IMG/VR virus record: IMGVR_UViG_3300042558_004148
Span: 309,486-373,485 of that record
Strand: one strand, 5' to 3'
DNA: 64,000 nt
The notes below the pieces were generated by a model that saw only the letters and a program-made list of their open reading frames with translations, did not search any database and was not told the origin of the DNA. The translations under genes were made by a program, and so were the position numbers. Shown piece after piece: positions 24,458-50,749 of the stretch. Position 1 is the first letter of the stretch; each line of letters starts with the position of its first letter.

Positions 24458-24507
24458 CAAATCTCAAGATTAATTACCTTGAGGCTGTCAGGTTCGAAAC
24501 TGACGAT

Positions 24508-24807: not shown

Positions 24808-24809
24808 CA

Positions 24810-24951: not shown

Positions 24952-24956
24952 TAACC

Positions 24957-25043
24957 GGAGGAGTCGCATAGTGGTTTAGTGCACCGGTCTTGAAAACCGG
25001 CGATCCTGAAAGGGGTCCGTGAGTTCGAATCTCACCTCCTCCG
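24957..25043 (+). tRNA. tRNA-Ser(TGA) copy 2
   Basis: CCGGT-CTTGAAA-ACCGG. Confidence 0.95.
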
Positions 25044-25047
25044 CAAA

Positions 25048-25342: not shown

Positions 25343-25347
25343 AACAT

Positions 25348-25419
25348 GGCCCGTTCGACTATCGGTTAGGTCGTCAGGTTTTCATCCTGGAAAGAGGGGT
25401 TCGATTCCCCTACGGGCTA
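25348..25419 (+). tRNA. tRNA-Glu(TTC)
   Basis: TCAGG-TTTTCAT-CCTGG. Confidence 0.95.
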
Positions 25420-25489
25420 CTATGTGTTAGATACTGTAATATTTAACACAGAGCCAATGAAAGTGATTTACAGATTGCTTGAATTGGTT

Positions 25490-33033: not shown

Positions 33034-33708
33034 ATGGCTTATCGAATAATATTAAGAAGAGACACCACTCAAAATTGGGAATCTAATAATCCCGTATTAC
33101 TTTCGGGCGAACCTGGGTATGAAACGGACACTGGAATACTAAGAGTCGGTGATGGACTAACAACTTGGAAGGATCTAAATCCATATTATGGTGTTACAGG
33201 ACCGATTGGTGTTACAGGTTCCACTGGAGCTACTGGAGCAATGGGAGTTACTGGAGCTACTGGACCTTCAGGAGGACCGGTTGGAGCTACTGGACCGGTT
33301 GGAGCTACTGGAGCAATAGGAGCTACTGGAGCAATAGGAGCTACTGGAGCAATAGGAGCTACTGGAGAAGTTGGAGCTACTGGAGCAATAGGAGCTACTG
33401 GAGCAATAGGAGCTACTGGAGCAATAGGAGCTACTGGAGCAATAGGAGCTACTGGAGCAATAGGAGCTACTGGAGCAATAGGAGCTACTGGAGCAATAGG
33501 AGCTACTGGAGCAATAGGAGCTACTGGAGAAGTTGGAGCTACTGGAGAAGTTGGAGCTACTGGAGCAATAGGAGCTACTGGAGCAATAGGAGCTACTGGA
33601 GCATCTATAGAATTTTCTTCTACTCAACCTGGCAATACTGCTTCGCCCTCCACATGGGGAGAAATAACGATAGGAGCTACAGCATATTACATACCTCTGT
33701 ATTTATAA
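33034..33708 (+). CDS. Mtd_N/hyaluronidase-N-like domain plus a collagen-like (GATGAI)n fibre
   Basis: [38 protein letters not shown]; GATATATA at 33003. Confidence 0.85.
33301..33603 (+). repeat. about 16 x 18-nt repeat GGAGCTACTGGAGCAATA (variant ...GAAGTT)
   Basis: Read directly. Confidence 0.95.
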
Positions 33709-35515: not shown

Positions 35516-37582
35516 ATGAATTACAACGAAAACGAGGATGATGATTTAGCATCAGCATACAAATCAAAGAAGGGGGTAAAAACTCCCATATTAGATTCTT
35601 ATTCTAGAGACTTAACAGAGATGGCGATTAGAGGTGAATTAGATCCAATAATCGGTAGAGACGAAGAAATAGAGAGAGTTTCACAGATCCTCTCCAGGAG
35701 AAAGAAAAATAATCCAGTTTTAATTGGAGAACCCGGTGTTGGTAAATCAGCAATTGCCGAAGGATTAGCATTAAAAATAGTACAAAGGAAGGTTTCAAGA
35801 AGTCTACTCAATAAAAGGGTACTTACTTTGGATTTAGGTTCAATGGTGGCAGGAACCAAATATAGAGGCCAATTTGAGGAAAGAGTAAAGGGGATACTAG
35901 AGGAGCTCAGAAACAATAAGGATATAATAATCTTCATAGATGAAATTCATACCATGGTCGGAGCTGGCGGTGCATCGGGTTCATTGGATGCTTCCAATAT
36001 GTTTAAGCCACCATTAGCTAGAGGCGAGATACAATGCATCGGGGCAACCACGCTGAATGAATATAGACAGAACATAGAAAAGGATGGTGCACTAGAAAGA
36101 AGATTTCAGAAAGTTATTGTAAATCCTCCAGATGCAGAAACTACCATAGAGATACTAGAAAACATAAAAAGTAAATATGAGGATTATCATAATGTAAAAT
36201 ATACGGATGAAGCCATATTAAATTGTGTGAAACTTACTGAAAGATATATTACTGATCGAAATTTTCCCGATAAGGCATTAGATGCACTTGATGAAGCAGG
36301 AAGTAGAACACAGCTTAGCGATGTTAAAATTCCAGACAGCATAACTAATTTGGAAACCAGCCTTATTAAAGTAACTGAGGAAAAAGATAAATCTGTAAAA
36401 AAGCAAGATTATGAGGGTGCTGCTAAATACAGAGATCAGGAAAGAAAAATTAGATTATCTCTGGATCTTGAAATAAAGTCATGGGAAGAAAAACTTAAGG
36501 CGAAAAGAAAAGTTGTTGATGGTGAAAGAGTAGCGGAAGTAGTTTCGATGATGTCAGGGGTTCCTCTTAAGAAAGTTTCAGAGGTTGAAAACGAAAGGCT
36601 CTACAGGATGAATGATGAATTACGTGGAAAAGTAATAGGTCAAGATCATGCTATAGAAAAAATTGCTAGGGCTATCCTTAGAAATAGAATGGGACTGAAA
36701 GATCCAAATAAACCAATAGGATCATTTATGCTATTAGGACCTACCGGAGTTGGTAAAACCCAATTGGCGAAAGAATTATCTAAATATATGTTTGGAGATA
36801 CTGACTCATTAATAAGAGTTGATATGAGTGAATATATGGAAAAATTTGACGTATCTAAATTAACGGGAGCTCCTCCAGGATACGTTGGACACGAAGACGG
36901 AGGACAATTAACCGAGAAAATAAGAAGAAAACCATATTCAATAGTACTTTTTGATGAAATTGAAAAGGCACACCCCGAGATATTTAATACACTACTCCAG
37001 ATACTGGATGAAGGTCATATCACAGATAGTATGGGGAGAAAAATAAACTTCAAGAATACGTTAATCATATTGACCTCTAATATAGGCCAAAGAAAATTGC
37101 AAGAATTTGGTGGCGGTGTCGGGTTTTCAACAGCAACAAAGGAAAACTATGCTGAAATGGAAAATGAAATGTTTCTTAGAAAAGAACTTGAGAAGAAGTT
37201 TTCCCCTGAATTTATAAATAGATTGGATGATATAGTTTATTTTAAAACATTAGAAAAGAAAGATCTACTTCAAATACTTGATGTTGAATTGGATAAGGTT
37301 ATTCCTAGATTAGAATCACTAGGATTTAAAGTTAAAATAGCTGATGATCTTAAAGATAAAATATGTGAAGCTGGATATAATCCAAAATTTGGTGCTAGAC
37401 CATTAAAAAGAATAGTACAGAAATATATTGAGGATACATTAGCTGATCTGATGGTACAAAATAAAATACCACAGGAAAGCACAGTTACATTATCATATGA
37501 CAAAGAGAAAGATGGTGGTATACAGAATCCAGTAAAATTTAAGATACTACAGAAAAGGAAAAGAAAAGATGATATGGCATAG
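35516..37582 (+). CDS. clpC: ClpC-like AAA+ chaperone lacking the N-terminal Clp_N domain
   Basis: GEPGVGKS and GPTGVGKT Walker A motifs; UVR-like KQDYEGAAKYRDQE; GGVGF loop; FGARPLKR. Confidence 0.92.
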   Translation: MNYNENEDDDLASAYKSKKGVKTPILDSYSRDLTEMAIRGELDPIIGRDEEIERVSQILSRRKKNNPVLIGEPGVGKSAIAEGLALKIVQRKVSRSLLNKRVLTLDLGSMVAGTKYRGQFEERVKGILEELRNNKDIIIFIDEIHTMVGAGGASGSLDASNMFKPPLARGEIQCIGATTLNEYRQNIEKDGALERRFQKVIVNPPDAETTIEILENIKSKYEDYHNVKYTDEAILNCVKLTERYITDRNFPDKALDALDEAGSRTQLSDVKIPDSITNLETSLIKVTEEKDKSVKKQDYEGAAKYRDQERKIRLSLDLEIKSWEEKLKAKRKVVDGERVAEVVSMMSGVPLKKVSEVENERLYRMNDELRGKVIGQDHAIEKIARAILRNRMGLKDPNKPIGSFMLLGPTGVGKTQLAKELSKYMFGDTDSLIRVDMSEYMEKFDVSKLTGAPPGYVGHEDGGQLTEKIRRKPYSIVLFDEIEKAHPEIFNTLLQILDEGHITDSMGRKINFKNTLIILTSNIGQRKLQEFGGGVGFSTATKENYAEMENEMFLRKELEKKFSPEFINRLDDIVYFKTLEKKDLLQILDVELDKVIPRLESLGFKVKIADDLKDKICEAGYNPKFGARPLKRIVQKYIEDTLADLMVQNKIPQESTVTLSYDKEKDGGIQNPVKFKILQKRKRKDDMA

Positions 37583-37688: not shown

Positions 37689-37889
37689 ATGAACAATAAA
37701 AAATATAAAGATGATGTAATAAAAGAAAATGTTATACTAAAAAGTAAAATAGCATATTCTATAGGGTCTCTTGAAACGGTAAGTTATTTATTGAAAAATG
37801 ATGATCCTGAAACGATAGTTAAAAATACGGAGCATCTTAAATTTACAGTGTCAAGAATACTCGAGGATCTTAAAAAAGATATAGCTTAG
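37689..37889 (+). CDS. small hypothetical protein
   Basis: 66-aa ORF. Confidence 0.5.
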   Translation: MNNKKYKDDVIKENVILKSKIAYSIGSLETVSYLLKNDDPETIVKNTEHLKFTVSRILEDLKKDIA

Positions 37890-38437
37890 CCCACTTTTAC
37901 TAATTTTATTTTAGCCCCTCTATATCCATTAACCTCCATGGCTAATCTAAGATTTTCATCATTATCATCGAAAAATGTGAGATTGGTATAACCGGAATCT
38001 ATTATATCTGATATAGCTTTTTGCTTTCTTTCCGCTATATTTCCGCTATAATTAAATTTGGGATCATTAATTGCTATTACGAGATCGGGATGTATGTCTA
38101 TCCTATTACAAAGAAAGAAATCCCTAACCAGATCGGATGAACTTCTTGCGGTAAGTATAGATACGGGTATACCCCTCCTATAGTAATTTTTTAATTTATT
38201 GAATATAAAATGAATAAATTCACCCTGCCTTAATATTTCCGGGCAATCAAAATCGTCGAAATTTAATATATGGGAGGAGCTATTCTCGAAGCTATTGAAC
38301 TCATCCGGAGTCATTTCTCGTATAACTTTTTTAGTTACTCTACTGACTATTTTAATTTTAGCGTCAGTTTTAATCAGAGTGTCATCCAGGTCAAATATAA
38401 CTATACGGTCCCCTTTGATATCTTTAAGTTTATTCAT
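37886..38437 (-). CDS. HAD-superfamily phosphatase (capless, polynucleotide 3'-phosphatase-like)
   Basis: FDLDDTL, ILTARS, ERKQ, FFDDNDEN. Confidence 0.8.
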   Translation of the reverse strand: MNKLKDIKGDRIVIFDLDDTLIKTDAKIKIVSRVTKKVIREMTPDEFNSFENSSSHILNFDDFDCPEILRQGEFIHFIFNKLKNYYRRGIPVSILTARSSSDLVRDFFLCNRIDIHPDLVIAINDPKFNYSGNIAERKQKAISDIIDSGYTNLTFFDDNDENLRLAMEVNGYRGAKIKLVKVG

Positions 38438-38441
38438 CCGA

Positions 38442-39101
38442 TTAGATAATTACATTAATCATCCTGGTTTTATTTGTTATTTTCTCCTCACTTAACTTAT
38501 CATATCTTAGATCCGATAATCCATCCTTAGATATCTCATCAGCAGTTGGATTTACCTGGAATTCTCTAAGTTTTTGTATATTTAGCATATATTGAGTCTG
38601 CTCTATGTCCCTTGTATGATCCAATGATTTATATCTACATTTTTTTCTATATGTTTGAATCCCCATTATGACACATCTAAGTAGAACGTCATCATCTTCA
38701 GCTCCCCATCCCCAATATGAATTTGAATATCCATTTATTTTAACAAAGCTGTCCTTATCGAATAGTGTAACTCCTCCGAAATATCCATCATAAGGCAATT
38801 TATATCCGAACTGTTCAGCCTCCGTAGCTAAATGTGTTGGTCCATCGGGATATGAATAATCAGAATCCAATGGAAGCATATCAACATCATGGAAAGCGTA
38901 ATAGTCGCTATCGGGTGATTCATTAAATCCTATATTAAGAAGCTTTGCTCTATTGAATTTCTTATCATCCGATTGATGAACTATTACAATTTCAAAATCT
39001 ATATTTTCTGAATTTAGTGTTTTTTCCATGTGAGGTATGAATTGTTCCATATGCTCCTCCCGGTTTCTATAAGGTACTATTACCGATAGCTTTTTAGACA
39101 T
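38442..39101 (-). CDS. GT7 beta-1,4-galactosyltransferase-like protein
   Basis: IVPYRNREEH, FNRAKLLNIGF, FHDVDMLP, YFGGV, NGYSNSYWGWGAEDDD. Confidence 0.9.
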   Translation of the reverse strand: MSKKLSVIVPYRNREEHMEQFIPHMEKTLNSENIDFEIVIVHQSDDKKFNRAKLLNIGFNESPDSDYYAFHDVDMLPLDSDYSYPDGPTHLATEAEQFGYKLPYDGYFGGVTLFDKDSFVKINGYSNSYWGWGAEDDDVLLRCVIMGIQTYRKKCRYKSLDHTRDIEQTQYMLNIQKLREFQVNPTADEISKDGLSDLRYDKLSEEKITNKTRMINVII

Positions 39102-39172
39102 TGTTTTATCTTTAATATGCCAAAATTGGACTTTTGTTTCGAAACCTGTCCTATTTTTTAACTATAATTAGT

Positions 39173-39931
39173 ATGATAAAAGACAGTGATATAATTTTCG
39201 TAACCACCTCTTTAAATACAAAATGGATAGGTATACAAAAAAAAATAGTCAGAGATAAATTCCCTGGTAGCGAGCATATTATAATGGACGGGCGGGGTAA
39301 CTGGCCAAACTCCTGGTTCTATTGGATAAATGAAATAAAAGATAGAAATGAAAGGTGGTTTATCCATGTGGATGAAGATTTTTTCATAGAAAGTCGGGAA
39401 GAAATATTAAGATTATTGGATATTATGGAATCCGGTAACTATGGAATATCTGCAATATCTGAAGCATATTGTCATTATAGGGGAAGCAATCCTGTTGCAA
39501 TGAATTCTTTCTTCATGGTTGGAAGAATATCAGATCTAAGTAATTTCAATTTCGACCCTTCAGAAATGGAATTTTATATAGGATCCGATGGATGGAAGAA
39601 TAATATGGGACTGGAGTATTCCGATGAATATTACAATGACTTCGATTACCCCCACGAAAAACAAACTACCGGTGAATGGAGCCAAAAAGAGAGTGAACCG
39701 TACTATGCCTTTTTCTGGTATCTGAAAAATCTCGGAGTTAAATTCCATTATTTATATCCATATTTTGACAAAAGATTCATGTCAACTAATCCCAGAATAT
39801 CCGGAGATTCCGATGATATCGGTATTCATATGTGGTACACTAGAATATGGGAAAGTAATATGGATGTACATGGAATGCCCAATATAGAGAGATATCTATT
39901 AGTAGAGAATTATTTAAAAAATAAAAATTAA
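39173..39931 (+). CDS. putative glycosyltransferase (DxD motif), probable start at 39173
   Basis: WFIHVDEDFF; first gene of the glycan island. Confidence 0.5.
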   Translation: MIKDSDIIFVTTSLNTKWIGIQKKIVRDKFPGSEHIIMDGRGNWPNSWFYWINEIKDRNERWFIHVDEDFFIESREEILRLLDIMESGNYGISAISEAYCHYRGSNPVAMNSFFMVGRISDLSNFNFDPSEMEFYIGSDGWKNNMGLEYSDEYYNDFDYPHEKQTTGEWSQKESEPYYAFFWYLKNLGVKFHYLYPYFDKRFMSTNPRISGDSDDIGIHMWYTRIWESNMDVHGMPNIERYLLVENYLKNKN

Positions 39932-40782
39932 TGATAACATTAAGACAAATAGGTTATGCAGGAAGGCTTGGTAACCAAATGTTCCAATTTGCATCAGCAT
40001 TGGGTATTGCAAATAAAATAAGTTCTGATGTGAAATTTCCGATAGAGAATACGAAGAATTATTTAAACAATGGTCCTATTGACTCGAAAACCGGCAAATC
40101 AATGGATGTTAAATGTGATCTATTGGATTGCTTCAGTGGTAAGATAGAAACATATTTTATAGAATCAAGTTTAATAGAATCAAGATATCAATTTACGGAG
40201 AGTGGATTTGAATATGATCCAGCTATCTCAAATATAATACCTTACACAAACATAAATGGCTATTATCAAACTGATCTATATTTTAATTTCATACAGGAAA
40301 AAATAAAAGAAATATTTAACTTCAAAGACGAATATAAGTATATAGGCAATGCAATCTACGAGAGCATAAATGGCAAGAATCCCAAAGATGAAATAATATC
40401 AATGCATGTAAGGAGAGGAGATTATGTACTTTACCCAGATCATCATCCCCCATGTGACATTAATTATTATAAAAATGCTATAGAAATAATTAAGTCTGAG
40501 TCACAATCACCCAAAAAAATACTAATATTTTCCGATGATAAGGAATGGTGCAGAATTAATTTTACAGGTGATGAATACATTATATCAGAAAACGATAATC
40601 CGTATATAGATTTATATCTCATGTCATTATGTGATTATCATATAATAGCAAATAGCTCCTTCAGTTGGTGGGGATCATGGTTAGCAAAATCTAAAAAAAC
40701 TATAGCACCCTTAAAGTGGTTTGGACCTATGCTAAGAAATAACACAAAAGACATATATAAAAAGGAATGGATAATATTATAG
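39931..40782 (+). CDS. GT11 alpha-1,2-fucosyltransferase
   Basis: GRLGNQMFQFA, HVRRGDY, FSDDKEWC, IANSSFSWWG. Confidence 0.92.
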   Translation: MITLRQIGYAGRLGNQMFQFASALGIANKISSDVKFPIENTKNYLNNGPIDSKTGKSMDVKCDLLDCFSGKIETYFIESSLIESRYQFTESGFEYDPAISNIIPYTNINGYYQTDLYFNFIQEKIKEIFNFKDEYKYIGNAIYESINGKNPKDEIISMHVRRGDYVLYPDHHPPCDINYYKNAIEIIKSESQSPKKILIFSDDKEWCRINFTGDEYIISENDNPYIDLYLMSLCDYHIIANSSFSWWGSWLAKSKKTIAPLKWFGPMLRNNTKDIYKKEWIIL

Positions 40783-41597
40783 AGAAAATTAATTTTTGCG
40801 TATATTCAAATGAAAAATACTCAAAACCTAGAAAATCCATATTGAACCTAGCTAAGAGAAGCCTTATATTTAATAGTATCTTTGAATATGATAGGGAATG
40901 GTTAGAAAAAACAAAATTTTATTCGGACAATATTGGTATATTGGGAGACACTAACGGCAAAGGTGATGGATGGTGTTTATGGAAACCGTATGTTATATTG
41001 GAATCTCTTAAAAAAATAGAGAATGGTGAAATATTAATCTATATGGATTCCACTGATACGTTTAGCTCCGGATTCAAGGAATTCATAATAGAGCATTTTA
41101 ATTCTAATGAATTCTTATTATCGCAAATGGGTGACAATAAGAATTCAGTCTACACAAAAAGAGATACATTTCATTATATGGGATGTGATTCAATTGAATA
41201 TTGGGAAACTCCTCAGTTGGAGGCAGGAATAATAGGTGTAAGGAAAAATGAGAATACTATCAGATTCATGGAGGAATATTTAAAATATTGTCAAGACGAG
41301 AGGATAATAAAGGATTCACCCAATATTTGTGGAAAGGATAATTTAGGGAATTATATTGGACATAGGTATGACCAAAGTGTATTGACTAATTTAAAAGTTA
41401 AATATTCAATAAAACCGTGCACCGATATTAGATATTATGTGGAATGTAATATATGGGAGGCATTACATTACTGGAATAATATAGGTGAATTTAATAGAAA
41501 AATTAACCTAATAGAAAGCAGATTTGAAGAAAGACCCGAGAATAATATGGATATTAAGTTCTGGAGAATTAATTATTTAGAGCATCTTATAAAATAA
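40767..41597 (+). CDS. putative nucleotide-diphospho-sugar transferase
   Basis: WCLWKPYVI, IYMDS, HRYDQSVLT. Confidence 0.65.
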   Translation: MDNIIEKINFCVYSNEKYSKPRKSILNLAKRSLIFNSIFEYDREWLEKTKFYSDNIGILGDTNGKGDGWCLWKPYVILESLKKIENGEILIYMDSTDTFSSGFKEFIIEHFNSNEFLLSQMGDNKNSVYTKRDTFHYMGCDSIEYWETPQLEAGIIGVRKNENTIRFMEEYLKYCQDERIIKDSPNICGKDNLGNYIGHRYDQSVLTNLKVKYSIKPCTDIRYYVECNIWEALHYWNNIGEFNRKINLIESRFEERPENNMDIKFWRINYLEHLIK

Positions 41598-41604
41598 AAG
41601 TCTC

Positions 41605-42417
41605 ATGTTAAGCATAAATCTAACCGTACATAATAAGGAGAATCTACTACTGGAGTGTCTTGAGAGAATAAAAAAACATACTACAGGGACATATGAGATA
41701 GTAACTGTTCTGGATGGATGTACTGACAGATCTGAATTAATTTTGGATAATTTCATCAAAAATAATACATCAATCAGAATAGAAAAAATACATGCACCAA
41801 ACGTATTTGAAACCAAATCCAATAATATAGCAGCAAGAGCAAGCTCAGGAGAACATATTGTAATAATTCAGGATGATATGTTAATTAACGAAACCTGCTG
41901 GAATGAGAGGATGCTTAAGCCCTTTATTTTATTCGATGATGTTTTTTCAGTAACTGCAAGGACCTCACATAATTGGATAATTAATAAGGATTCTGTCCAT
42001 TCCAACTGTGAATCTATACCTCCAGGAATATGGTCAGATATATTAATACATACCGATCATGCAAATAGAAACAATACCGGGAGAGATGAATTTTCAATAA
42101 GAGACAGTTCAAACAGAGGACCGCTAATTATAAATCATAAAGATCTAGAAACACTTAATTATTTCGACGAATCATTCTATCCTCAGGATATGGATGATCA
42201 TGATCTACATTACAGAATGAAGAAACTTCTAGGGAAGGTTACTGGGATTTATTGGATAGACTATATAAGCGACAATGAGTGGGGAGGAACAAGAGAAAAT
42301 GGGGTAACTAAACAATGGATGTTAGATGCAAATCATAAAAACTCTGGTATATTGAGAGATAGACATCTGGATATTTTATCATCTCCCGGTAAAATGGAGG
42401 TTCGGAAATGTATATAA
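41605..42417 (+). CDS. GT2-family glycosyltransferase
   Basis: LTVHNKE, VLDGCTDRS, IIQDDM, DMDDHDL. Confidence 0.85.
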   Translation: MLSINLTVHNKENLLLECLERIKKHTTGTYEIVTVLDGCTDRSELILDNFIKNNTSIRIEKIHAPNVFETKSNNIAARASSGEHIVIIQDDMLINETCWNERMLKPFILFDDVFSVTARTSHNWIINKDSVHSNCESIPPGIWSDILIHTDHANRNNTGRDEFSIRDSSNRGPLIINHKDLETLNYFDESFYPQDMDDHDLHYRMKKLLGKVTGIYWIDYISDNEWGGTRENGVTKQWMLDANHKNSGILRDRHLDILSSPGKMEVRKCI

Positions 42418-42421
42418 AAAA

Positions 42422-43399
42422 ATGGACCATATTATGAAAAAAATAATTATCACCGGTGACATATCAACGAGGGATAAATTAAAGATGGAGGGATTCATAA
42501 AAGCATTCTCGAAAATAGGACATGTCGAGTATGTCGAGCCAAATCTTAGAGATAATATAATAAATCGAGGACCTTGTGATATATTATTTGGTGAATCGGC
42601 AGATTGGTTTCATGTTGATTATACTAATATAAAAAACGTCTTTATGTGGTGTATAATTGACCCATATAAATTTTTAGAAATATCTGAAAAATATACAAAT
42701 ACTAATTTTTTCATATGTTCAAAAAGTGTAATACACATTGATTCGGTATCGAAGGAATATATAAAAAGATACGATACTCCCATATACATGGAGGGAACTT
42801 TTGAGGAAATAGATCTATTGAAGTTCAGTGAATTCATAGGAGAATGTGAACTTATGGACGAAAACTTATACAAGTTTAAGGAAAATCTATATTATATGTA
42901 TTTACCATGTTCCCTTTCTTCATCACATATAGCTAATCATGAAAAAAGGGATATTGATATCACATATTTCGGAACTAGAGAGAATAGACCAGGCGTAACA
43001 GATATAATAAATCAAATGAGTTCGCTCGGATATAAAGTTACGTATAATCATACTGGAATTTATATTGGTCCCGATGAATGCATAGAATATTACAAGAGGT
43101 CCTTAATAACCCTACATGAGCAGGTGGGTCCAGTGCATTTAGAATTTCCGGTCAGATTTGGCGAAGCATCATATTGTGGTTCCACTATTTTTTCATTAGG
43201 TATGATGGGGAAATTAGCAGAATTTGCACAGTCGAATGATAATGTTCCCGCATTTAGATCTTTCAATAATAAAGAGGAACTCATTAAAGAGGCAATATGT
43301 TATATAGATACATACGGAAAAAAGGAAGATCCAGTGGTAGTTAAAGATGGTTATACTTATGATACATATTGTAAAAAAATAATAGATTTATCAATATGA
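42422..43399 (+). CDS. putative GT-B glycosyltransferase (CgeB-like C-terminus)
   Basis: DITYFGTREN-R...YKRSLITLH...VRFGEASYCG. Confidence 0.5.
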   Translation: MDHIMKKIIITGDISTRDKLKMEGFIKAFSKIGHVEYVEPNLRDNIINRGPCDILFGESADWFHVDYTNIKNVFMWCIIDPYKFLEISEKYTNTNFFICSKSVIHIDSVSKEYIKRYDTPIYMEGTFEEIDLLKFSEFIGECELMDENLYKFKENLYYMYLPCSLSSSHIANHEKRDIDITYFGTRENRPGVTDIINQMSSLGYKVTYNHTGIYIGPDECIEYYKRSLITLHEQVGPVHLEFPVRFGEASYCGSTIFSLGMMGKLAEFAQSNDNVPAFRSFNNKEELIKEAICYIDTYGKKEDPVVVKDGYTYDTYCKKIIDLSI

Positions 43400-44505
43400 A
43401 AAAATATGATTTTCTTATAGTTGGTGCTGGCCTTTTCGGATCGGTATTTGCTCAACAAGCCATTGAAAATGGATATACCTGTCTAATAATAGATAAAAGA
43501 AACCATAATGCAGGAAATGTATACACTGAGAATGTAAATGGCATAGATGTACATAAATATGGTGCACATATATTCAGAACATCGAGTAGCGATATATGGA
43601 ATTATGTTAATAGGTTCACTAAATTTAATCATTATACAAATAGGGTTAAGGTAAAATATGAAGAAAAGGTTTTCTCCTTTCCTATAAATCTTCTAACATT
43701 TAATCAGGTTTTTGGGTGTATTACACCAGAGGATGCCATAAATAAACTCAAAGAAAAAAAAATTAATATAGAGAATCCAAAAAATCTGGAGGAACATCTA
43801 TTATCTACCATAGGCGAGGATCTATATAAAATTTTTTTCCACGGCTATACTAAAAAACAGTGGGGGAGAGAACCGAGGGATTTGCCAAAGAGCATAATAT
43901 CAAGAATACCCATAAGGACTAATTTCGACGATAATTATTTTAATGACTGCTATCAGGGTATACCAGTTAATGGATATACCGATATGATAGAAAATATGCA
44001 AAAAGGAGCAGATATTTTACTAAACGAGAACTATTTGGATGATGTAGAAAAATGGAATTCAATTTGTGAAAAGGTTGTATATACGGGACCAATAGACGAA
44101 CTCATGGGATTTTGTTTCGGTGAATTAGAATATAGAAGTCTCAGATTCGAGGAGCATCTAATCAATACACCAGATTATCAGGGTTGCGCGGTTGTTAATT
44201 TTACTAGCGAATCGATAGAATATACAAGAATTATAGAGCATAAACATTTCACATTTGGCAAGCAAGATTTTACTATAATATCCAAAGAATTTCCGGAAAA
44301 ATGGGATAATACTAAGGAAAGATATTATCCGGTAAATGATGAAGGAAACAATATCAAATATAATCAATATAAAAATATGATTGAATCTGATCCCAAATAT
44401 ATTTTAGGCGGGAGACTTGCTGAATATAGATATTATGATATGAATCAAGTTATAGGATCAGCAATTAGCAAATTTTCCAAATTCATCAAAAAAAATAATA
44501 AGTAA
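43396..44505 (+). CDS. glf: UDP-galactopyranose mutase
   Basis: IVGAGLFGS, HKYGAHIF, YQGIPVNGY, RYYPVN, GRLAEYRYYDM. Confidence 0.95.
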   Translation: MKKYDFLIVGAGLFGSVFAQQAIENGYTCLIIDKRNHNAGNVYTENVNGIDVHKYGAHIFRTSSSDIWNYVNRFTKFNHYTNRVKVKYEEKVFSFPINLLTFNQVFGCITPEDAINKLKEKKINIENPKNLEEHLLSTIGEDLYKIFFHGYTKKQWGREPRDLPKSIISRIPIRTNFDDNYFNDCYQGIPVNGYTDMIENMQKGADILLNENYLDDVEKWNSICEKVVYTGPIDELMGFCFGELEYRSLRFEEHLINTPDYQGCAVVNFTSESIEYTRIIEHKHFTFGKQDFTIISKEFPEKWDNTKERYYPVNDEGNNIKYNQYKNMIESDPKYILGGRLAEYRYYDMNQVIGSAISKFSKFIKKNNK

Positions 44506-44506
44506 A

Positions 44507-45160
44507 ATGGTATCATATTCACAAGCAGGACAGGATATATTTGTAATCAATATATTAAAAAACGCAGGGAAGTTTTTAGATCTAGGATGCTATTTACCAG
44601 ATAAAATAAATAACACTTATCTATTAGAAAAAAATGGCTGGGACGGAGTTTCGGTTGATATATTTGATTATTCTAATGAGTGGAAATTAAGGAGTAGTAA
44701 ATTCATACAGATGGATTGTTTATCTGTTAACTATAAGGAATTTCTAGATTTACACTATCCTAATTCAAATAATATAATAGATTATCTTTCGATAGATATG
44801 GAGTTGTTGGGTGACAGATATACTCTCCTTAATAAGGTTATGCTTAGCGGATATGAATTTAAAATAATCACGATAGAGCATGATTCTCATCTAGGTAACG
44901 ACTACATAGAGGGAGAAAAAAATAAACAAGCTGAGCTTCTAAATAATATGGGATATTATTTATTATGTAACGATGTGGCAAATTATAAAAATCCGGATAT
45001 GTTTTATGAAGATTGGTGGATAAACCCAAAACATATAAATCCCGATGAGTATAATATGCTAAAATCATCCAGAATCAGCTGCGACCAGATATTTTTAAAA
45101 GCAGGAATAGAATATAAAATAAGCGACATCTCTAAAAATTGGGATGATTATAAAATATAG
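44507..45160 (+). CDS. FkbM-like methyltransferase
   Basis: SYSQAGQD, FLDLGC, NNTYLLEKNGWDG, IDYLSID, ITIEHD. Confidence 0.75.
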   Translation: MVSYSQAGQDIFVINILKNAGKFLDLGCYLPDKINNTYLLEKNGWDGVSVDIFDYSNEWKLRSSKFIQMDCLSVNYKEFLDLHYPNSNNIIDYLSIDMELLGDRYTLLNKVMLSGYEFKIITIEHDSHLGNDYIEGEKNKQAELLNNMGYYLLCNDVANYKNPDMFYEDWWINPKHINPDEYNMLKSSRISCDQIFLKAGIEYKISDISKNWDDYKI

Positions 45161-45162
45161 AA

Positions 45163-45753
45163 ATGATTAAAATACTACCATCAGACTCAACACAATGGTA
45201 TCTCGATAACGGAGATAATACATTAAGAATAGATTATCCCGAAATTAATCAAAAATCCACGGTTGTTGATATTGGGGCAAGACATGGATCTTGGTCGGAC
45301 CAAATAAAAACAAAATATTCACCTAATATATTTTGTTTTGAAGTTGTACCAAGTTTTTGTGAAGAATTGAAAGTCAAGGGGTATACAGTTTTTCAAAACG
45401 CAGTATATAATAGGGACGGGAAAATAATGATAGGAATAGACGGCGACGAGGGATCGGTATACCATACTAATAATACATTTGAGGTTGAATCAATACAAGC
45501 AAATAGTATATTTAATATAATAGGATCCGACGTAATAGATCTGATTAAAATTAATGTAGAGGGAGCAGAGTATTCGATACTAAATGATTTAATATTATCC
45601 AATACTATAGGTAAAATAAAAAACATACAGGTACAATTTCATCTAATAGAGAACCACGAGGAACAATATGATAATATAGTAAAAGAACTAGAAAAAACAC
45701 ATAGACTCACCTGGAGATATCCGTTCGTTTGGGAAAACTGGGAAATAAAATAA
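45163..45753 (+). CDS. FkbM-family methyltransferase
   Basis: VDIGARHG, IDLIKINVEGAEY, IQVQFH. Confidence 0.85.
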   Translation: MIKILPSDSTQWYLDNGDNTLRIDYPEINQKSTVVDIGARHGSWSDQIKTKYSPNIFCFEVVPSFCEELKVKGYTVFQNAVYNRDGKIMIGIDGDEGSVYHTNNTFEVESIQANSIFNIIGSDVIDLIKINVEGAEYSILNDLILSNTIGKIKNIQVQFHLIENHEEQYDNIVKELEKTHRLTWRYPFVWENWEIK

Positions 45754-45785
45754 AGTAAAGTAAAGCAGATTATATAATATTAGAA

Positions 45786-46718
45786 ATGAAAGATTTAACT
45801 AAAACAACATTAATAATACCAGTAAAGGTAGAACATAATGATAGATACAGAAATGCAAAGAATGTTCTTAATTTTCTAAACTCCAATATAAAAACAAATG
45901 TCTTTATATATGAGATATCTGATAACGGTGAAAGTAAATTAGACTTCATAAACGAATTGGGTAATCTGAAAATAAGTCACTGGGTACTACCGAACGAATC
46001 ACCATTTCATCGTACAAAATATCTTAATATTATGTTGGATAAAGTAGAAACTCCCGTTGTTGTTAATTATGATATAGATGTTCTATTAGATCCAAATAAT
46101 ATGTTGGAATGTCAGAATATCATATTGAGAGGGGAATCTTCAGTAATATATCCATACGAGCTTGGTCTCGGACAAATCCAAGTATACGAAACTTTTGATT
46201 ATAGTGGATTTGAAAAATCTGGATATTCCATAGATTTTATAAATAATTCAGATAAAATCAATACTTGGTATGCTGAATGCGGGCATTGTATATTTTTTAA
46301 TACCGAGATATACAGAGATTTTGGTGGAGAGAATGAGAATTTCATATCATATGGACCAGAAGATAAGGAAAGATTATACAGGTTCCAAATATTATCAAAT
46401 AGTGTTTCTTGGAGGGATGGACAAAAGGTATACCATCTTGAACATTATAGAGGAAATGATAGTTGGACAACAAATCCAAGCTTCAGTCACAATTGGAATA
46501 TATTCGATTCTCTTAAAGGAATGTCGGGAGAAGACCTCATGGAATACTATAAAAAATCGGATTACACAAAGAAATATTCAACGATAAGCAAGAATCACCC
46601 TATATTAACTGAATTGGGAGAAATAGGAAATGCTATAGAGAAAATAGTAAGTCCGCCAAAAATAATACAGAATTCGAATATCCAGATAAATCAAAACGAT
46701 CCCTCCACACTTAGATAA
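45786..46718 (+). CDS. GT2/GT7C-like glycosyltransferase
   Basis: FHRTKYLN, NYDIDV, FGGENENFISYGPEDKE. Confidence 0.8.
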   Translation: MKDLTKTTLIIPVKVEHNDRYRNAKNVLNFLNSNIKTNVFIYEISDNGESKLDFINELGNLKISHWVLPNESPFHRTKYLNIMLDKVETPVVVNYDIDVLLDPNNMLECQNIILRGESSVIYPYELGLGQIQVYETFDYSGFEKSGYSIDFINNSDKINTWYAECGHCIFFNTEIYRDFGGENENFISYGPEDKERLYRFQILSNSVSWRDGQKVYHLEHYRGNDSWTTNPSFSHNWNIFDSLKGMSGEDLMEYYKKSDYTKKYSTISKNHPILTELGEIGNAIEKIVSPPKIIQNSNIQINQNDPSTLR

Positions 46719-46783
46719 TATTGGTTTCTAAATATAATGGAATATAAATCCACAATTGGACTACAATATCATAAATATATTAA

Positions 46784-47695
46784 ATGGGAAAAATAATAAT
46801 AACCGGTGGAAGCGGATTAGTAGGTAGTGCTTTTAAGGGTGATGAATTTATACATCTTTCATCAAAAGACGGGGATCTTAGAAATATCGATTCGATAAAA
46901 CCAATACTGGAAAAAAATAAACCGGAGGGAATAATACACTGTGCTGCTAAAGTTGGTGGTGTTTTAGGTAATACTAAATATCCTGGGAATTTCTATAGGG
47001 ATAATATTCTTATGAACACCAACGTTATAGAGGAAGCAAGAAAACATGAAATCAAAAAACTTGTATTTTTCTCCTCAACATGTGTATTTCCTGATAATGT
47101 CGAATACCCATTATCACCAGAAAAAATTCATCTTGGACCACCACATAAATCAAACTATGCTTATGCTTATGCTAAAAGAATGGGGCAAGTTCAGATACAA
47201 GCATACAAGGATCAGTATGATCTTGATTATTTTACAGTTATACCTACCAATATTTACGGACCTAACGATTTTTATAATCTGGAAAACGGACATGTTCTAC
47301 CCTCACTAATACATAAAATGTATTTAGCAAAAGAAAATGGGACGGATTTCGTAGTATGGGGATCCGGTAATCCTCTAAGAGAGTTTATATTTTCCGAAGA
47401 TGTGGCTAGATTAACAATGAATCTATATAATGACTACAGAGGAAATGATCCAGTTATATTATCAACGTCGAATGAAATAAGTATAAAGGATGTCGTACTT
47501 ATGATCGCAGATATTTTTGAATTTAAAGGTAATATAAAATTTGATTCGACTAAACCGGAGGGTCAATACAGAAAGCCCAGCGATAATTCGGTGATAAAGG
47601 GGATGTATCCGGATTTTAAATTTACCCCGATGGAGGAAGGATTAAAAAAATCAATACATTGGTTTATAGAAAATTATGAAAATATTAGAAAGTAA
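46784..47695 (+). CDS. fcl: GDP-L-fucose synthase
   Basis: TGGSGLVG, HCAAKVGG, SSTCVFP, YAYAKR, PTNIYGPND, WGSGNPLREF. Confidence 0.95.
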   Translation: MGKIIITGGSGLVGSAFKGDEFIHLSSKDGDLRNIDSIKPILEKNKPEGIIHCAAKVGGVLGNTKYPGNFYRDNILMNTNVIEEARKHEIKKLVFFSSTCVFPDNVEYPLSPEKIHLGPPHKSNYAYAYAKRMGQVQIQAYKDQYDLDYFTVIPTNIYGPNDFYNLENGHVLPSLIHKMYLAKENGTDFVVWGSGNPLREFIFSEDVARLTMNLYNDYRGNDPVILSTSNEISIKDVVLMIADIFEFKGNIKFDSTKPEGQYRKPSDNSVIKGMYPDFKFTPMEEGLKKSIHWFIENYENIRK

Positions 47696-48678
47696 TGGAA
47701 AAGAAAAGAGCATTAATAACCGGAATTAACGGACAGGATGGTAGTTATCTTGCTGAATTACTTATAGATAAAGGATATGAGGTATTTGGTACAATCAAAA
47801 GAAACTCAGTATCTGAAAATCAAACAGCAAGATTAGATTCGGTGTATGAAGAAATAAAAGATAACCTGATATATGCGGATTTATTGGATGTTCCTTCATT
47901 ACTGCATGCTTTAAAGATATCAGATCCCTGCGAAGTATATAATTTAGCTGCGCAATCACACGTGAGGATATCCTTCGACCAACCAGTTTATACAGCACAA
48001 GCAACAGGCATAGGTACACTCAATCTACTGGAAGCAATAAGATTACATAATCAGGAAATAAAAATGTACCAGGCATCCTCATCGGAAATGTTTGGTAATT
48101 CCATAGATGATGATGGATACCAAAGGGAAACGACACCCATGAACCCGGTTAGTCCATATGGATGCGCTAAGGTATTTTCATATAATATATGTAGAAATTA
48201 TAGGAATTCATACGGAATGTTTATAAGTAACGGCATTCTATTCAATCACGAATCTCCGCGTAGGGGCACAAACTTTGTCACTAACAAGGTAGTAAAGACA
48301 GCAGTAAGGATTAAGCTAGGTTTGGAAAATAAACTCGTTTTAGGTAACCTAGATGCCACTAGAGACTGGGGACACGCAAAGGATTATGTGGAAGCTATGT
48401 GGATGATGCTCCAACAGGATAAATCTGGTGACTATATCTGTTCAACCGGTATATCACATTCTGTTCTTGACTTAGTTGAATATGTCTTTGATAAATTGGA
48501 TCTTGATTGGAAAGAATACGTCGGAACTGATAGCAAATTTTTAAGGCCAGAAGAACTTGAAGATCTAAAAGGAGATTCAAGAAAACTTAGAAATGATACT
48601 GGATGGTCACCCAAGTATAATTTCGAATCGATGTTAGATGAAATGATTGAGCATTGGCTGGAACATTATTCCAAATAA
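47695..48678 (+). CDS. gmd: GDP-mannose 4,6-dehydratase
   Basis: ITGINGQDGSYLAE, YNLAAQSHV, QASSSEMFG, SPYGCAK, NHESPRRG, RDWGHAKDY. Confidence 0.97.
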   Translation: MEKKRALITGINGQDGSYLAELLIDKGYEVFGTIKRNSVSENQTARLDSVYEEIKDNLIYADLLDVPSLLHALKISDPCEVYNLAAQSHVRISFDQPVYTAQATGIGTLNLLEAIRLHNQEIKMYQASSSEMFGNSIDDDGYQRETTPMNPVSPYGCAKVFSYNICRNYRNSYGMFISNGILFNHESPRRGTNFVTNKVVKTAVRIKLGLENKLVLGNLDATRDWGHAKDYVEAMWMMLQQDKSGDYICSTGISHSVLDLVEYVFDKLDLDWKEYVGTDSKFLRPEELEDLKGDSRKLRNDTGWSPKYNFESMLDEMIEHWLEHYSK

Positions 48679-48699
48679 ACTAATAACTACCAATAATAA

Positions 48700-48728
48700 T
48701 AAAAGCCGCTATATGCGGCTTTTATTTT
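48700..48728 (+). terminator. intrinsic terminator
   Basis: AAAAGCCGC-TATAT-GCGGCTTTT. Confidence 0.8.
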
Positions 48729-50036: not shown

Positions 50037-50040
50037 TTGT

Positions 50041-50739: not shown

Positions 50740-50749
50740 TTAATTAAAA

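What the first reader, a model, noticed from the sequence alone, without database searches (positions are those of the whole stretch)
38442..48678. Self-contained glycan island able in principle to make Fuc-alpha1,2-Gal (H-antigen-like) structures
Seen: gmd, fcl, GT11, a GT7 galactosyltransferase, further GT2/GT7C-like enzymes, glf and two FkbM-like methyltransferases. Established: GT7 plus GT11 activities build type-2 H antigen; GT7 is best known from animals. Inference: likely acceptors are the Ser/Thr-rich fibre linkers in this window (poly-Thr at 10029; GTS tracts at 33822 and 61353), which would give a glycan-shielded virion. Alternatively the island remodels the host surface.
Basis: partly seen in the sequence, partly recalled or inferred. 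Interest (0 to 1): 0.62.

Follow-up and report, generated by a model that had tools for sequence, protein, structure and literature searches.

The report
Huge-phage fucose–galactose glycan gene island
An uncultured 373-kb freshwater phage carries a 13-gene operon-like island of soluble sugar enzymes, built around an animal-type galactosyltransferase paired with a fucosyltransferase, that can probably make blood-group-H-like sugar caps, most likely on the phage's own collagen-like fibres.

Summary
Window 37886-48678 is a compact glycan island. It has gmd, fcl, glf, one clear FkbM methyltransferase, a GT11, a GT2 and a 219-aa GT7. The GT7 matches human B4GALT1 at E=1.7e-43 and keeps all its catalytic motifs. 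Four further proteins look like glycosyltransferases by fold or motif. The second "FkbM-like" gene is not supported.

The window is the end of a 373,485-bp IMG/VR huge phage. That phage recurs almost unchanged in lake, wastewater and estuary metagenomes.

New evidence comes from 13 related loci. GT7 and GT11 are always adjacent and divergent, at a fixed site beside a ClpA/B-like ATPase and collagen-like fibre genes. The other roughly ten sugar genes are swapped wholesale: GT6 (ABO-type), GT31, GT17, kinases and aminotransferases. This supports a Fuc-α1,2-Gal-β1,4 core.

"Self-contained" is overstated. There is no GDP-mannose synthesis, galE lies elsewhere, and no initiating enzyme is identified.

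No island protein has a membrane span, and there is no Wzx, Wzy or priming transferase. I favour cytoplasmic glycosylation of virion proteins (about 0.5). Host-surface remodelling is the main rival (about 0.3). Nothing was tested biochemically. I rate it a new variant of a known kind.

The parts
37886..38437 (-). HAD-IIIC-like phosphatase, co-oriented with GT7. Role unknown; possibly a sugar-phosphate phosphatase.
   Evidence: TIGR01681 27.6 bits, below cut-off; weak PF13419. Homologue sits next to GT7 in 6 of 12 related loci.
38442..39101 (-). Compact soluble GT7 β-1,4-galactosyltransferase homologue (219 aa), with no membrane anchor or stem.
   Evidence: PF13733 and PF02709 above cut-off. 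Human/bovine B4GALT1 E=1.7e-43, B4GALT7 E=5e-35. F-N-R, H-D-x-D, (Y)FGGV, WGWGAEDDD and His162 are invariant or nearly invariant in 35 homologues. No TM segment.
39173..39931 (+). u265: uncharacterised protein with a conserved D-E-D (DxD-like) motif, a candidate divergent GT-A glycosyltransferase. First gene of the + strand operon.
   Evidence: Homologues align from residue 14 of the TTG-started ORF 39134, so ATG 39173 is the likely start. The profile gives only weak GT-A hits: B4GALNT1 DxD region E=0.074; 3 of 40 members hit GT2-like Pfam families. The single-sequence fold was unusable.
39931..40782 (+). GT11 α-1,2-fucosyltransferase homologue.
   Evidence: PF01531 105.8 bits; phrog_2644 252.6 bits. 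36-37% identical to annotated α-1,2-fucosyltransferases of cyanomyoviruses. The H-V-R-R-G-D-Y and S-F-S-W-W-G motifs are visible.
40767..41597 (+). u276: GT-A-fold nucleotide-diphospho-sugar transferase-like protein (GT34 / DUF1647 / TOD1-like).
   Evidence: ESM Atlas: feature score 0.96 and TM 0.78 to a Glyco_transf_34 cluster; the nearest clusters are unnamed phage proteins. No Pfam hit.
41605..42417 (+). GT2 family glycosyltransferase. Candidate galactofuranosyltransferase; this is inference only.
   Evidence: PF00535 53.4 bits.
42422..43399 (+). u325: GT-B-fold glycosyltransferase-like protein (Glyco_trans_1_2 / GT4-like).
   Evidence: Atlas structural neighbours TM 0.62-0.66 to Glycos_transf_1 / Glyco_trans_1_2 clusters. 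PF13524 E=0.13.
43396..44505 (+). glf, UDP-galactopyranose mutase (makes UDP-Galf).
   Evidence: PF03275 248.7 bits; TIGR00031 359.5 bits, above cut-off 303.75.
44507..45160 (+). u217: conserved protein of unknown function.
   Evidence: 678 metagenomic clusters, none with a Pfam domain. No PDB-profile hit. Only a short FkbM-like motif.
45163..45753 (+). FkbM-family SAM methyltransferase, a likely sugar O-methyltransferase.
   Evidence: PF05050 37.7 bits; TIGR01444 52.2 bits, above cut-off.
45786..46718 (+). GT7C-like GT-A glycosyltransferase with D-I-D and G-P-E-D motifs. Conserved in sister islands next to fcl.
   Evidence: PF02709 17.1 bits, below cut-off. 613 metagenomic clusters. AF2 pLDDT 89.7. 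Foldseek best hits are K4CP, ppGalNAc-T2, heparosan synthase and B4GALT1, TM about 0.5. phrog_15655 209.6 bits.
46784..47695 (+). fcl, GDP-L-fucose synthase (GDP-4-keto-6-deoxymannose epimerase/reductase).
   Evidence: PF01370 163.9 bits. Best NCBIfam match NF047922, 240.6 bits, below the equivalog cut-off.
47695..48678 (+). gmd, GDP-mannose 4,6-dehydratase.
   Evidence: PF16363 389.6 bits. TIGR01472 391.2 bits, just under cut-off 415.
48698..48726 (.). Palindromic GC-rich hairpin flanked by A/T runs, directly after gmd. Possible operon terminator.
   Evidence: The number of such sites in the region is no more than chance, so only its position is suggestive.
35516..37582 (+). ClpA/B-like double AAA+ ATPase, the conserved backbone gene that marks the island's left border.
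   Evidence: 71-78% identical in related loci. 61% identical to the 642-kb phage LR756502.1, where it also abuts a glycan island.
33822..35381 (+). Collagen-like tail-fibre protein (G-T-S, G-S-S and G-T-N triplets), a candidate glycan acceptor.
   Evidence: Homologues lie beside the island in the related loci.
33034..33708 (+). Collagen-like fibre protein (G-A-T and G-A-I triplets), a candidate acceptor.
61353..64000 (+). Very long collagen-like fibre ORF (G-T-S, G-T-D and G-T-N triplets) that runs off the record end. A candidate acceptor.
10029..11861 (+). Virion-structural-like protein with a roughly 60-residue poly-Thr linker between two domains. A candidate acceptor.

Best explanation
The island is a glycan-synthesis module of an uncultured freshwater huge phage. 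The phage is related to the 'Mahaphage' group and probably infects Bacteroidota. The module consists of an 11-gene + strand operon plus the divergent GT7-HAD pair.

Shown by sequence:
- gmd and fcl would convert host GDP-mannose to GDP-L-fucose.
- glf would convert UDP-Galp to UDP-Galf. UDP-Galp would come from the host or from the phage's own galE elsewhere in the genome.
- There are seven proteins that are glycosyltransferases or look like them.
- At least one FkbM methyltransferase is present.
- None of these proteins has a membrane span.

Inferred:
- The conserved core works in series. The GT7 adds β1,4-Gal to a GlcNAc-, Glc- or Xyl-type acceptor. The GT11 then caps that Gal with α1,2-Fuc, giving an H-antigen-like terminus.
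- The variable enzymes add Galf and O-methyl groups in this phage. In sister phages they add α1,3-GalNAc/Gal (GT6), β3-linked sugars (GT31) and others. This gives each lineage its own glycan 'serotype'.

Most likely target (inferred, about 0.5): phage structural proteins, glycosylated in the cytoplasm before assembly. The main candidates are the collagen-like fibres encoded next to the island and the poly-Thr linkers of other virion proteins. In those fibres the G-X-Y triplets carry Thr or Ser. The glycan could stabilise the triple helix and mask or diversify the virion surface.
For: Gene content and motifs:
- Gene identities.
- The GT7 matches B4GALT1 at E=1.7e-43. DVD, FNRA, YFGGV, WGWGxEDDD and the distal His are kept and conserved in 35 homologues.

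Conserved core, variable remainder:
- The GT11|GT7 divergent pair is invariant in 13 loci. It sits at a fixed site between the Clp ATPase plus collagen-like fibre genes and a variable block.
- Sister islands carry GT6, GT31, GT17, GT2s, a HAD-nucleotidyltransferase, a GHMP kinase, DegT and FkbM.
- The GT6 is BoGT6a/ABO-like and has DXD. Characterised GT6 of this phage-like type transfer GalNAc to H trisaccharide or 2'-fucosyllactose, but not to LacNAc (PMC3516806).

Soluble, co-transcribed enzymes:
- No hydrophobic 19-mer reaches TM level in any island protein.
- Genes abut or overlap, consistent with one operon. A hairpin follows gmd.

Candidate acceptors:
- Neighbouring fibre genes across the clade have Thr at the Y position in 56-79% of triplets.
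- This genome has further poly-Thr and G-T-N/S giant proteins.

Reality of the phage:
- The same island is found nearly identical in lake, freshwater, wastewater and estuary metagenomes from several studies.

Precedents, from established knowledge:
- Mycobacteriophage capsid and tail-tube glycosylation (Freeman 2023, cited in PMC12619734).
- Chlorovirus and mimivirus self-encoded glycosylation.
- O-glycosylated G-P-T repeats of Bacillus BclA.
- Gal-Thr stabilisation of collagen helices.
Against: - There is no biochemical or proteomic evidence of any kind.
- No initiating protein glycosyltransferase is identified. The GT7C-like enzyme only resembles the GT2/GT27/GT7 clan in general (TM about 0.5).
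- Cytoplasmic glycosyltransferases of O-antigen and capsule pathways are also soluble or peripheral. Lack of TM segments therefore does not exclude lipid-linked acceptors.
- The related GT11/GT6 clusters of cyanomyoviruses are usually read as host-surface (LPS) genes (PMC12801897).
- Synteny with fibre genes may be positional only.
- Outside this clade, GT7 homologues are not next to collagen-like genes.
- Thr at Y is common in prokaryotic collagens whether or not they are glycosylated.
- The GT7 acceptor sugar is unknown, so 'type 2 H' is not established.
Confidence: 0.5

Rival explanations
1. Host-surface remodelling. The soluble phage enzymes act on the host's undecaprenyl-linked O-antigen, capsule or glycoprotein precursors at the inner face of the membrane. 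The host's own flippase, polymerase and ligase export the altered glycan. This would change the infected cell's surface, for example to block superinfection, to stop progeny adsorbing to debris, or to alter grazer recognition.
For: - Gene sets of this type (gmd, fcl, GT11, GT6, GT2) are typical of bacterial O-antigen clusters that mimic blood-group antigens. This is established knowledge, e.g. E. coli O86.
- GT11/GT6 clusters of cyanomyoviruses are conventionally interpreted this way (PMC12801897).
- Likely Bacteroidota hosts are rich in fucosylated surface glycans. Host assignment rests on the relation to Mahaphages (PMC7162821).
- The phage depends on host GDP-mannose.
Against: - The island has no priming phosphoglycosyltransferase, Wzx, Wzy or ligase, and no membrane-associated segment. 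Host flippases and polymerases are usually specific for their own repeat unit.
- The phage-type GT6 of sister islands lacks the membrane-binding tail of the Bacteroides enzyme. This rests on length and on DXD type (PMC3516806).
- The island is fixed beside virion fibre genes across the clade.
- The wholesale swapping of about ten genes resembles the virion-glycan clusters of giant viruses.
Confidence: 0.3
2. DNA hypermodification. The glycosyltransferases build oligosaccharides on hydroxymethylated bases of phage DNA to evade restriction and CRISPR.
For: - Phage glycosyltransferases are known to decorate DNA with diverse glycans (Pyle 2024, cited in PMC12619734).
- The genome has a second, very divergent thymidylate-synthase-like ORF that could be a pyrimidine hydroxymethylase. 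This is weak: 18.9 bits in Pfam, E=5e-6 in NCBIfam.
Against: - GT7, GT11, GT6 and GT31 families, GDP-fucose, UDP-Galf and sugar methylation are not known from DNA glycosylation.
- The TS-like gene is about 190 kb from the island.
- No known DNA glucosyltransferase family was seen in the island.
Confidence: 0.03
3. Another cytoplasmic or released product. The island could make a free or lipid- or small-molecule-linked fucosylated oligosaccharide (decoy, compatible solute, signalling glycan). Alternatively it could glycosylate non-structural phage or host proteins.
For: All enzymes are soluble and no acceptor is identified. GT7 homologues outside this clade sit in nucleotide-sugar clusters with no fibre genes nearby.
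Against: There is no export function. The hypervariable content argues for a product exposed to selection by other organisms. There is no precedent in phages.
Confidence: 0.12

Closest known systems
Mammalian ABO(H) pathway: B4GALT1 (GT7) → FUT1/FUT2 (GT11) → A/B transferases (GT6)
   Same: The same three CAZy families are involved. The phage GT7 is alignable over its whole length to the B4GALT1 catalytic domain (E=1.7e-43). I count roughly 35-40% identical positions in the alignment, and all catalytic motifs are kept. The GT11 motifs are kept. Sister islands add a GT6.
   Different: The phage enzymes are bare catalytic domains with no signal anchor or stem, and would act in the bacterial cytoplasm. 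The acceptor is unknown. This phage's island has no GT6 and adds glf, methyltransferase(s) and four other putative glycosyltransferases.
GT11/GT6 ('LPS' or cell-wall modification) gene clusters of T4-like cyanomyoviruses (P-SSM2, S-SM2, S-CAM7, S-SCSM1)
   Same: These are phage-encoded GT11 (36-37% identical), GT6 and GT7C-like genes, clustered with sugar epimerases. In P-SSM2 the GT11 and GT6 lie about 1.5 kb apart.
   Different: No GT7 homologue was found in any of 50,697 GenBank phage records. The phage lineage and habitat differ. There is no fixed link to Clp or collagen-like fibre genes. Function is untested there too.
Virion glycosylation of mycobacteriophages (Freeman et al. 2023), chloroviruses and mimivirus fibrils
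   Same: In all of these, virus-encoded soluble glycosyltransferases and nucleotide-sugar enzymes act in the cytoplasm on structural proteins. The gene clusters are clade-specific and variable. Mimivirus fibrils also involve collagen-like proteins. The tri-domain GT-GT-FkbM protein elsewhere in this genome recalls PBCV-1 A064R; this is from memory.
   Different: In those systems the glycans are demonstrated experimentally. Here nothing is. The glycosyltransferase families differ: those systems have no GT7/GT11 core.
Bacterial O-antigen clusters that mimic blood-group antigens (e.g. E. coli O86: gmd, fcl, GT11 WbnK, GT6 WbnI)
   Same: Both combine gmd and fcl with a GT11, and with a GT6 in sister islands. 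The predicted fucosylated galactoside is the same.
   Different: The bacterial clusters carry wzx and wzy and rely on a priming transferase, and their Gal is added by a GT2. The phage island has none of the membrane components and uses a GT7.
Bacillus anthracis BclA exosporium glycoprotein
   Same: Both are collagen-like G-X-Thr repeat fibres. In BclA these are O-glycosylated with methylated or deoxy sugars (established knowledge). The fibre genes beside the phage islands have Thr at Y in 56-79% of triplets.
   Different: In this window's largest fibres Thr is at X (G-T-S, G-T-N, G-T-D). The glycan chemistry differs, and no glycosylation is shown.
Clp-adjacent sugar gene block of the 635-642-kb 'Mahaphage' genomes (LR745206.1, LR756502.1; Al-Shayeb 2020)
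   Same: The Clp ATPase is 61% identical. It is flanked by GT2, GT6, GT2, DUF5672, DUF3431, GT11 and GT17 on one side and fcl plus an FkbM-like gene on the other.
   Different: There is no GT7. The records are unannotated, and the main text of the paper contains no word beginning 'glycosyl' or 'fucos'.

Membership tests
CAZy GT7 / β-1,4-galactosyltransferase | Both Pfam halves (Glyco_transf_7N and 7C) above the gathering score | tested here: met
   80.5 and 85.3 bits against cut-offs of 27 and 23.
CAZy GT7 / β-1,4-galactosyltransferase | Catalytic motifs of B4GALT1: FNRAKLLN, metal-binding D-V-D, FGGV, WGWGxEDDD with the catalytic Asp, and the distal metal His | tested here: met
   All align with human B4GALT1. 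They are invariant or nearly invariant in 35 phage homologues.
CAZy GT7 / β-1,4-galactosyltransferase | Tyr preceding FGGV (bovine Tyr289), which restricts the donor to UDP-Gal rather than UDP-GalNAc | tested here: met
   Tyr107 is present and at least 90% conserved. The link to donor choice comes from established mutagenesis literature and was not tested here.
CAZy GT7 / β-1,4-galactosyltransferase | Inverting transfer of Gal in β1,4 linkage to a GlcNAc, Glc or Xyl acceptor | not testable with these tools
   Needs an enzyme assay.
CAZy GT11 / α-1,2-fucosyltransferase | Pfam Glyco_transf_11 above cut-off, plus the GDP-fucose motif HxRRGD and the C-terminal SxFSWW motif | tested here: met
   105.8 bits against a cut-off of 23.9. 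Motifs read directly in the translation. The motif definition is from memory.
CAZy GT11 / α-1,2-fucosyltransferase | Fucosylates the 2-OH of a terminal β-Gal, here the GT7 product | not testable with these tools
   Only indirect support: an invariant GT7|GT11 pair in 13 loci and GT6 in sister islands.
De novo GDP-L-fucose pathway (Gmd + Fcl) | Both enzymes present and adjacent | tested here: met
   PF16363 389.6 bits. The best NCBIfam hits are gmd and GDP-fucose synthase, although both are below the strict equivalog cut-offs.
De novo GDP-L-fucose pathway (Gmd + Fcl) | Own supply of GDP-mannose (ManB/ManC), which a 'self-contained' island would need | tested here: not met
   No NTP_transferase match anywhere in the 373-kb genome.
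Wzx/Wzy-dependent O-antigen or capsule gene cluster | Priming phosphoglycosyltransferase, flippase and polymerase (polytopic membrane proteins) in the cluster | tested here: not met
   No island protein has a TM-grade hydrophobic segment: the maximum 19-residue Kyte-Doolittle mean is 1.39. No such Pfam family was hit. The rest of the genome was not searched for Wzx, Wzy or PGT families.
Virus-encoded virion protein glycosylation system (mycobacteriophage / chlorovirus / mimivirus type) | Virus-encoded soluble glycosyltransferases plus nucleotide-sugar enzymes | tested here: met
Virus-encoded virion protein glycosylation system (mycobacteriophage / chlorovirus / mimivirus type) | Glycan covalently attached to virion structural proteins | not testable with these tools
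   Needs glycoproteomics. Only synteny with fibre genes and S/T-rich tracts are available.
   No hit at E≤10 in Pfam, none in NCBIfam or PHROGs, none with a 30-sequence profile against PDB, and hhalign probability 10%.

The most novel reading that the evidence does not exclude
A widespread clade of freshwater huge phages decorates its collagen-like fibres (G-X-Thr/Ser triplets) and poly-Thr linkers with histo-blood-group-like glycans. A conserved soluble GT7→GT11 core builds these glycans. Swapping GT6, GT31, GT17, glf and methyltransferase modules diversifies them, giving a virion 'serotype' system. The compact phage GT7 family would also be the long-missing non-animal reservoir of β4-galactosyltransferases, which bears on how metazoan Golgi glycosyltransferase families arose or spread.
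Probability: 0.3. Interest if true: 0.82.

Novelty: new variant of a known kind. Interest (0 to 1): 0.62.

Why it matters
- **Virion glycans in huge phages.** Phage-encoded glycan clusters and virion glycosylation are known, but from few systems. This case adds an animal-type β4-galactosyltransferase family that is abundant in uncultured huge phages (979 clusters). It is absent from all GenBank phage records and rare in 185,579 prokaryote species genomes (14 loci, mostly short MAG contigs).
- **A testable prediction.** The fixed pairing with GT11 and the ABO-type GT6 in sister islands predict H/A-like epitopes made in a bacterial cytoplasm.
- **If the target is the virion.** It would show glycan shielding or serotype variation in the largest phages. 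It would also give a function to their collagen-like Thr-rich fibres.
- **Practical use.** A 219-residue, anchor-free, presumably disulfide-independent β4GalT, with a matching α2FucT, would be an attractive tool for LacNAc and fucosylated-oligosaccharide synthesis in bacteria.
- **Evolution.** It extends to GT7 the prokaryote/phage-vertebrate link already argued for GT6.

Tried and rejected
- Megablast of the island against GenBank phages found nothing.
- A single-sequence AlphaFold run of u265 gave pLDDT 41.7 and was unusable. It wasted one of the two fold jobs; an alignment should have been used.
- The u265 profile against PDB and Pfam gave only sub-threshold GT-A hints.
- For u217, the pairwise comparison, hhalign, the PDB profile, and Pfam at E≤10 and PHROGs at E≤0.001 gave no support for a methyltransferase assignment.
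- The T4 late-promoter motif TATAAATA is not enriched: 13 found against 15.8 expected. The sigma-70-like and terminator scans give chance-level counts. Expression timing therefore could not be inferred.
- I tested whether metagenomes holding only 58-76% of the island's words carry a strain with a swapped island. They do not. The contigs are short, low-depth and identical or nearly so.
- No RNA run holds the island, so expression is unknown.
- I considered a cytoplasmic N-glycosyltransferase acting on the many N-G-T/S sequons of the G-T-N-G-T-S arrays. I did not search for GT41, so this stays an idea only.
- I did not run complex prediction. No specific enzyme-acceptor pair is well enough founded.
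- A rooted GT7 phylogeny with animal sequences could not be built, because no animal sequences were available as session objects.

Full report
**What the window is.** The window is the last 64 kb (309486-373485) of a 373,485-bp IMG/VR virus record that CheckV rates complete. It carries 32 tRNA genes, UvsX, DnaB and SbcCD homologues, and several collagen-like tail-fibre genes. It is therefore a huge tailed phage. Its ClpA/B-like ATPase is 61% identical to that of the 635-642-kb 'Mahaphage' genomes. Those phages were predicted to infect Bacteroidetes (PMC7162821). The island sequence occurs nearly unchanged in lake, freshwater, wastewater and estuary metagenomes. Among the runs not flagged as a possible source there are six studies, so it is not an assembly chimera.

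**The observation.**
- On the minus strand lie a HAD-IIIC-like phosphatase (37886-38437) and a 219-aa GT7 (38442-39101).
- On the plus strand, abutting or overlapping each other, lie eleven genes: u265 (true start probably ATG 39173), GT11, u276, GT2, u325, glf, u217, FkbM, a GT7C-like protein, fcl and gmd. The run ends at 48678 and is followed by a palindromic hairpin at 48698-48726.
- The GT7 is not a vague GT-A hit. It aligns end to end with the catalytic domain of human and bovine B4GALT1 (E=1.7e-43) and with B4GALT7 (E=5e-35). It keeps FNRAKLLN, the D-V-D metal site, Y-FGGV, WGWGAEDDD and the distal His. These residues are invariant or nearly invariant across 35 diverse homologues.
- The GT11 shows the H-V-R-R-G-D-Y and S-F-S-W-W-G motifs.
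- The unknown proteins were partly resolved. u276 is a GT-A, GT34/DUF1647/TOD1-like protein. u325 has a GT-B Glyco_trans_1_2-like fold. The GT7C-like protein gives a confident GT-A model (pLDDT 89.7) nearest to chondroitin polymerase, ppGalNAc-T2 and B4GALT1. u265 belongs to a small family with a conserved D-E-D motif and only sub-threshold GT-A similarity.

**No membrane components.** No island protein has a transmembrane-grade hydrophobic segment. The island has no flippase, polymerase or priming transferase.

**Not self-contained.** The genome has no nucleotidyltransferase that could make GDP-mannose. The UDP-glucose 4-epimerase (TIGR01179, 404.5 bits) lies at genome position 214360-215382, outside the window. 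Other sugar genes also lie elsewhere: a GT2-TPR protein and a 959-aa GT4-GT9-FkbM fusion.

**Comparative evidence.** This is the main new result.
- The GT7 has 51 relatives among IMG/VR contigs and 979 protein clusters at 90% identity in metagenomes, nearly all 218-219 aa.
- It has none in 50,697 GenBank phage records. Only 14 were found in 185,579 prokaryote species genomes, mostly on short MAG contigs. One of these is plainly phage DNA, with the order GT2-GT11-GT7-Clp.
- In 13 loci of the same phage clade (Clp 71-78% identical) the gene order is constant: a variable block of about 8-12 sugar genes, then GT11(-) | GT7(+), then HAD in some loci, a small ORF, Clp, and collagen-like fibre genes.
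- The GT11|GT7 divergent pair never varies, whereas the block beside it is exchanged wholesale. In sister phages the block contains GT6, GT31 (Galactosyl_T), GT17, several GT2s, DUF5672, DUF3431, a HAD-nucleotidyltransferase fusion, a GHMP kinase, a DegT aminotransferase, FkbM methyltransferases and a second GT11.
- The GT6 is closest to the Bacteroides ovatus blood-group-A-synthesising enzyme and to human ABO transferases. It carries a D-V-D motif like the cyanophage and Parachlamydia type. That type transfers GalNAc to H trisaccharide and 2'-fucosyllactose, but not to LacNAc (PMC3516806).
- A GT6 that needs Fuc-α1,2-Gal, sitting in islands anchored by GT7 and GT11, is the best available indirect support for the predicted Fuc-α1,2-Gal-β1,4 core.
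- The 642-kb Mahaphage LR756502.1 has a comparable Clp-flanking block (GT2, GT6, GT2, DUF5672, DUF3431, GT11, GT17, fcl) but no GT7. The locus is therefore old, and the GT7 is a clade-specific addition.

**Mechanism.**
- Shown by homology: GDP-Man → GDP-Fuc (gmd, fcl); UDP-Galp → UDP-Galf (glf); seven glycosyltransferase-like proteins; at least one sugar methyltransferase.
- Inferred: the GT7 adds β1,4-Gal, and the conserved Tyr before FGGV suggests UDP-Gal as donor. The GT11 caps that Gal with α1,2-Fuc. The GT2 or another enzyme uses UDP-Galf. FkbM methylates a sugar.
- Not inferable: the acceptor sugar of the GT7 (GlcNAc would give type 2 H), the initiating enzyme, and the order of the other steps.

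**Target.** I favour virion proteins, at about 0.5, for these reasons:
- All enzymes are soluble.
- The island is fixed next to fibre genes.
- The adjacent collagen-like proteins across the clade have Thr at the Y position in 56-79% of triplets. This is the arrangement that is O-glycosylated in Bacillus BclA, and in which Gal-Thr stabilises collagen helices (established knowledge).
- This phage's own giant fibres are G-T-S, G-T-N and G-T-D arrays, and three large proteins carry poly-Thr linkers.
- The serotype-like turnover of the block recalls the clade-specific fibril glycosylation clusters of giant viruses.

None of this is direct. Host-envelope remodelling remains a serious rival (about 0.3). 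O-antigen glycosyltransferases are also soluble, and similar cyanophage clusters are read that way (PMC12801897). DNA glycosylation is unlikely (about 0.03). Another cytoplasmic or released product accounts for about 0.12.

**Comparison with known systems and novelty.** Phage GT11/GT6 clusters in cyanomyoviruses, mycobacteriophage virion glycosylation and giant-virus glycosylation clusters are the nearest known kinds. The new features are:
- the compact GT7 family;
- its invariant pairing with GT11 at a fixed locus beside Clp and collagen-like fibres;
- the concentration of families better known from animals (GT7, GT11, GT6, GT31, GT17) in one hypervariable phage locus.

Literature searches found no description of this. 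The paper on a possibly related freshwater lineage mentions core glycosyltransferases only in general terms (PMC12619734). I rate it a new variant of a known kind, with interest 0.62.

Noticed in passing
window 9216-25420: 32 tRNA genes on the + strand in several clusters. They cover most amino acids and include four tRNA-Met(cat) and one odd call with a 2-base anticodon at 20717-20787.
   Followed up: no
window 61353-64000 and genome start: The long collagen-like ORF (G-T-S/D/N triplets) runs off the record end. The record's 'direct terminal repeat' is only 127 bp and lies inside this triplet-repeat coding sequence. A 1524-aa collagen-like ORF follows at genome 1008-5582. The DTR may be an assembly overlap of a circularly permuted genome, and the fibre gene may be far longer than shown. 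ORFs on the opposite strand and in other frames at 62351-64000 are repeat artefacts.
   Followed up: partly
genome 10594-13473 (L067), outside the window: A 959-aa fusion protein with GT4-like (Glycos_transf_1), GT9-like and C-terminal FkbM methyltransferase domains. It is a multi-domain glycan enzyme reminiscent of chlorovirus A064R (from memory).
   Followed up: partly
genome 214360-215382 (L069) and 143712-144986 (L068), outside the window: A bona fide galE (TIGR01179, 404.5 bits) and a GT2 with a TPR-like C-terminal half. The phage's sugar metabolism is not confined to the island.
   Followed up: partly
genome 161224-162003 (L070:225-1004), outside the window: A 259-aa ORF with only a faint thymidylate-synthase-like signal, in addition to a normal ThyA at 172805. 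It could be a pyrimidine hydroxymethylase, which would hint at modified DNA.
   Followed up: no
window 35516-37582: A ClpA/B-like double AAA+ ATPase with a UVR motif. It is conserved as the island's neighbour in every related locus and in the 635-642-kb Mahaphage genomes. Its role (fibre folding? host takeover?) is unknown.
   Followed up: partly
L005:1713-2432, L007:7668-8297, L007:2378-3268, L007:1428-2375, L012:1436-2581, L005:4979-6334: Sister islands carry GT6 (ABO-type, DXD), GT31, GT17, a GHMP sugar kinase, a DegT aminotransferase and a HAD-nucleotidyltransferase fusion. Three loci have two GT11 paralogues.
   Followed up: partly
L053 (CALAYS010000141.1) and other short MAG contigs L054-L058: GT7 hits in 'bacterial' MAGs sit on short contigs. 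L053 has the phage order GT2-GT11-GT7-Clp, so it is probably phage DNA binned into a MAG.
   Followed up: partly
L051 (IMGVR GVMAG-S-3300005613-42): A giant-virus MAG contig carries a distant GT7 (32% identical) with a GT11 about 2 kb away. The pairing recurs outside tailed phages.
   Followed up: no
genome 82152-86912 and 86967-88166, outside the window; window 10029-11861: Three large proteins carry long poly-Thr (mucin-like) linkers. The one in the window joins two domains and hits a virion structural protein PHROG.
   Followed up: partly
window 48762-51604: Three conserved ORFs (424, 232 and 284 aa) directly downstream of the island have no Pfam or PHROG match. They have 26-34% identical counterparts downstream of gmd in L006.
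   Followed up: no
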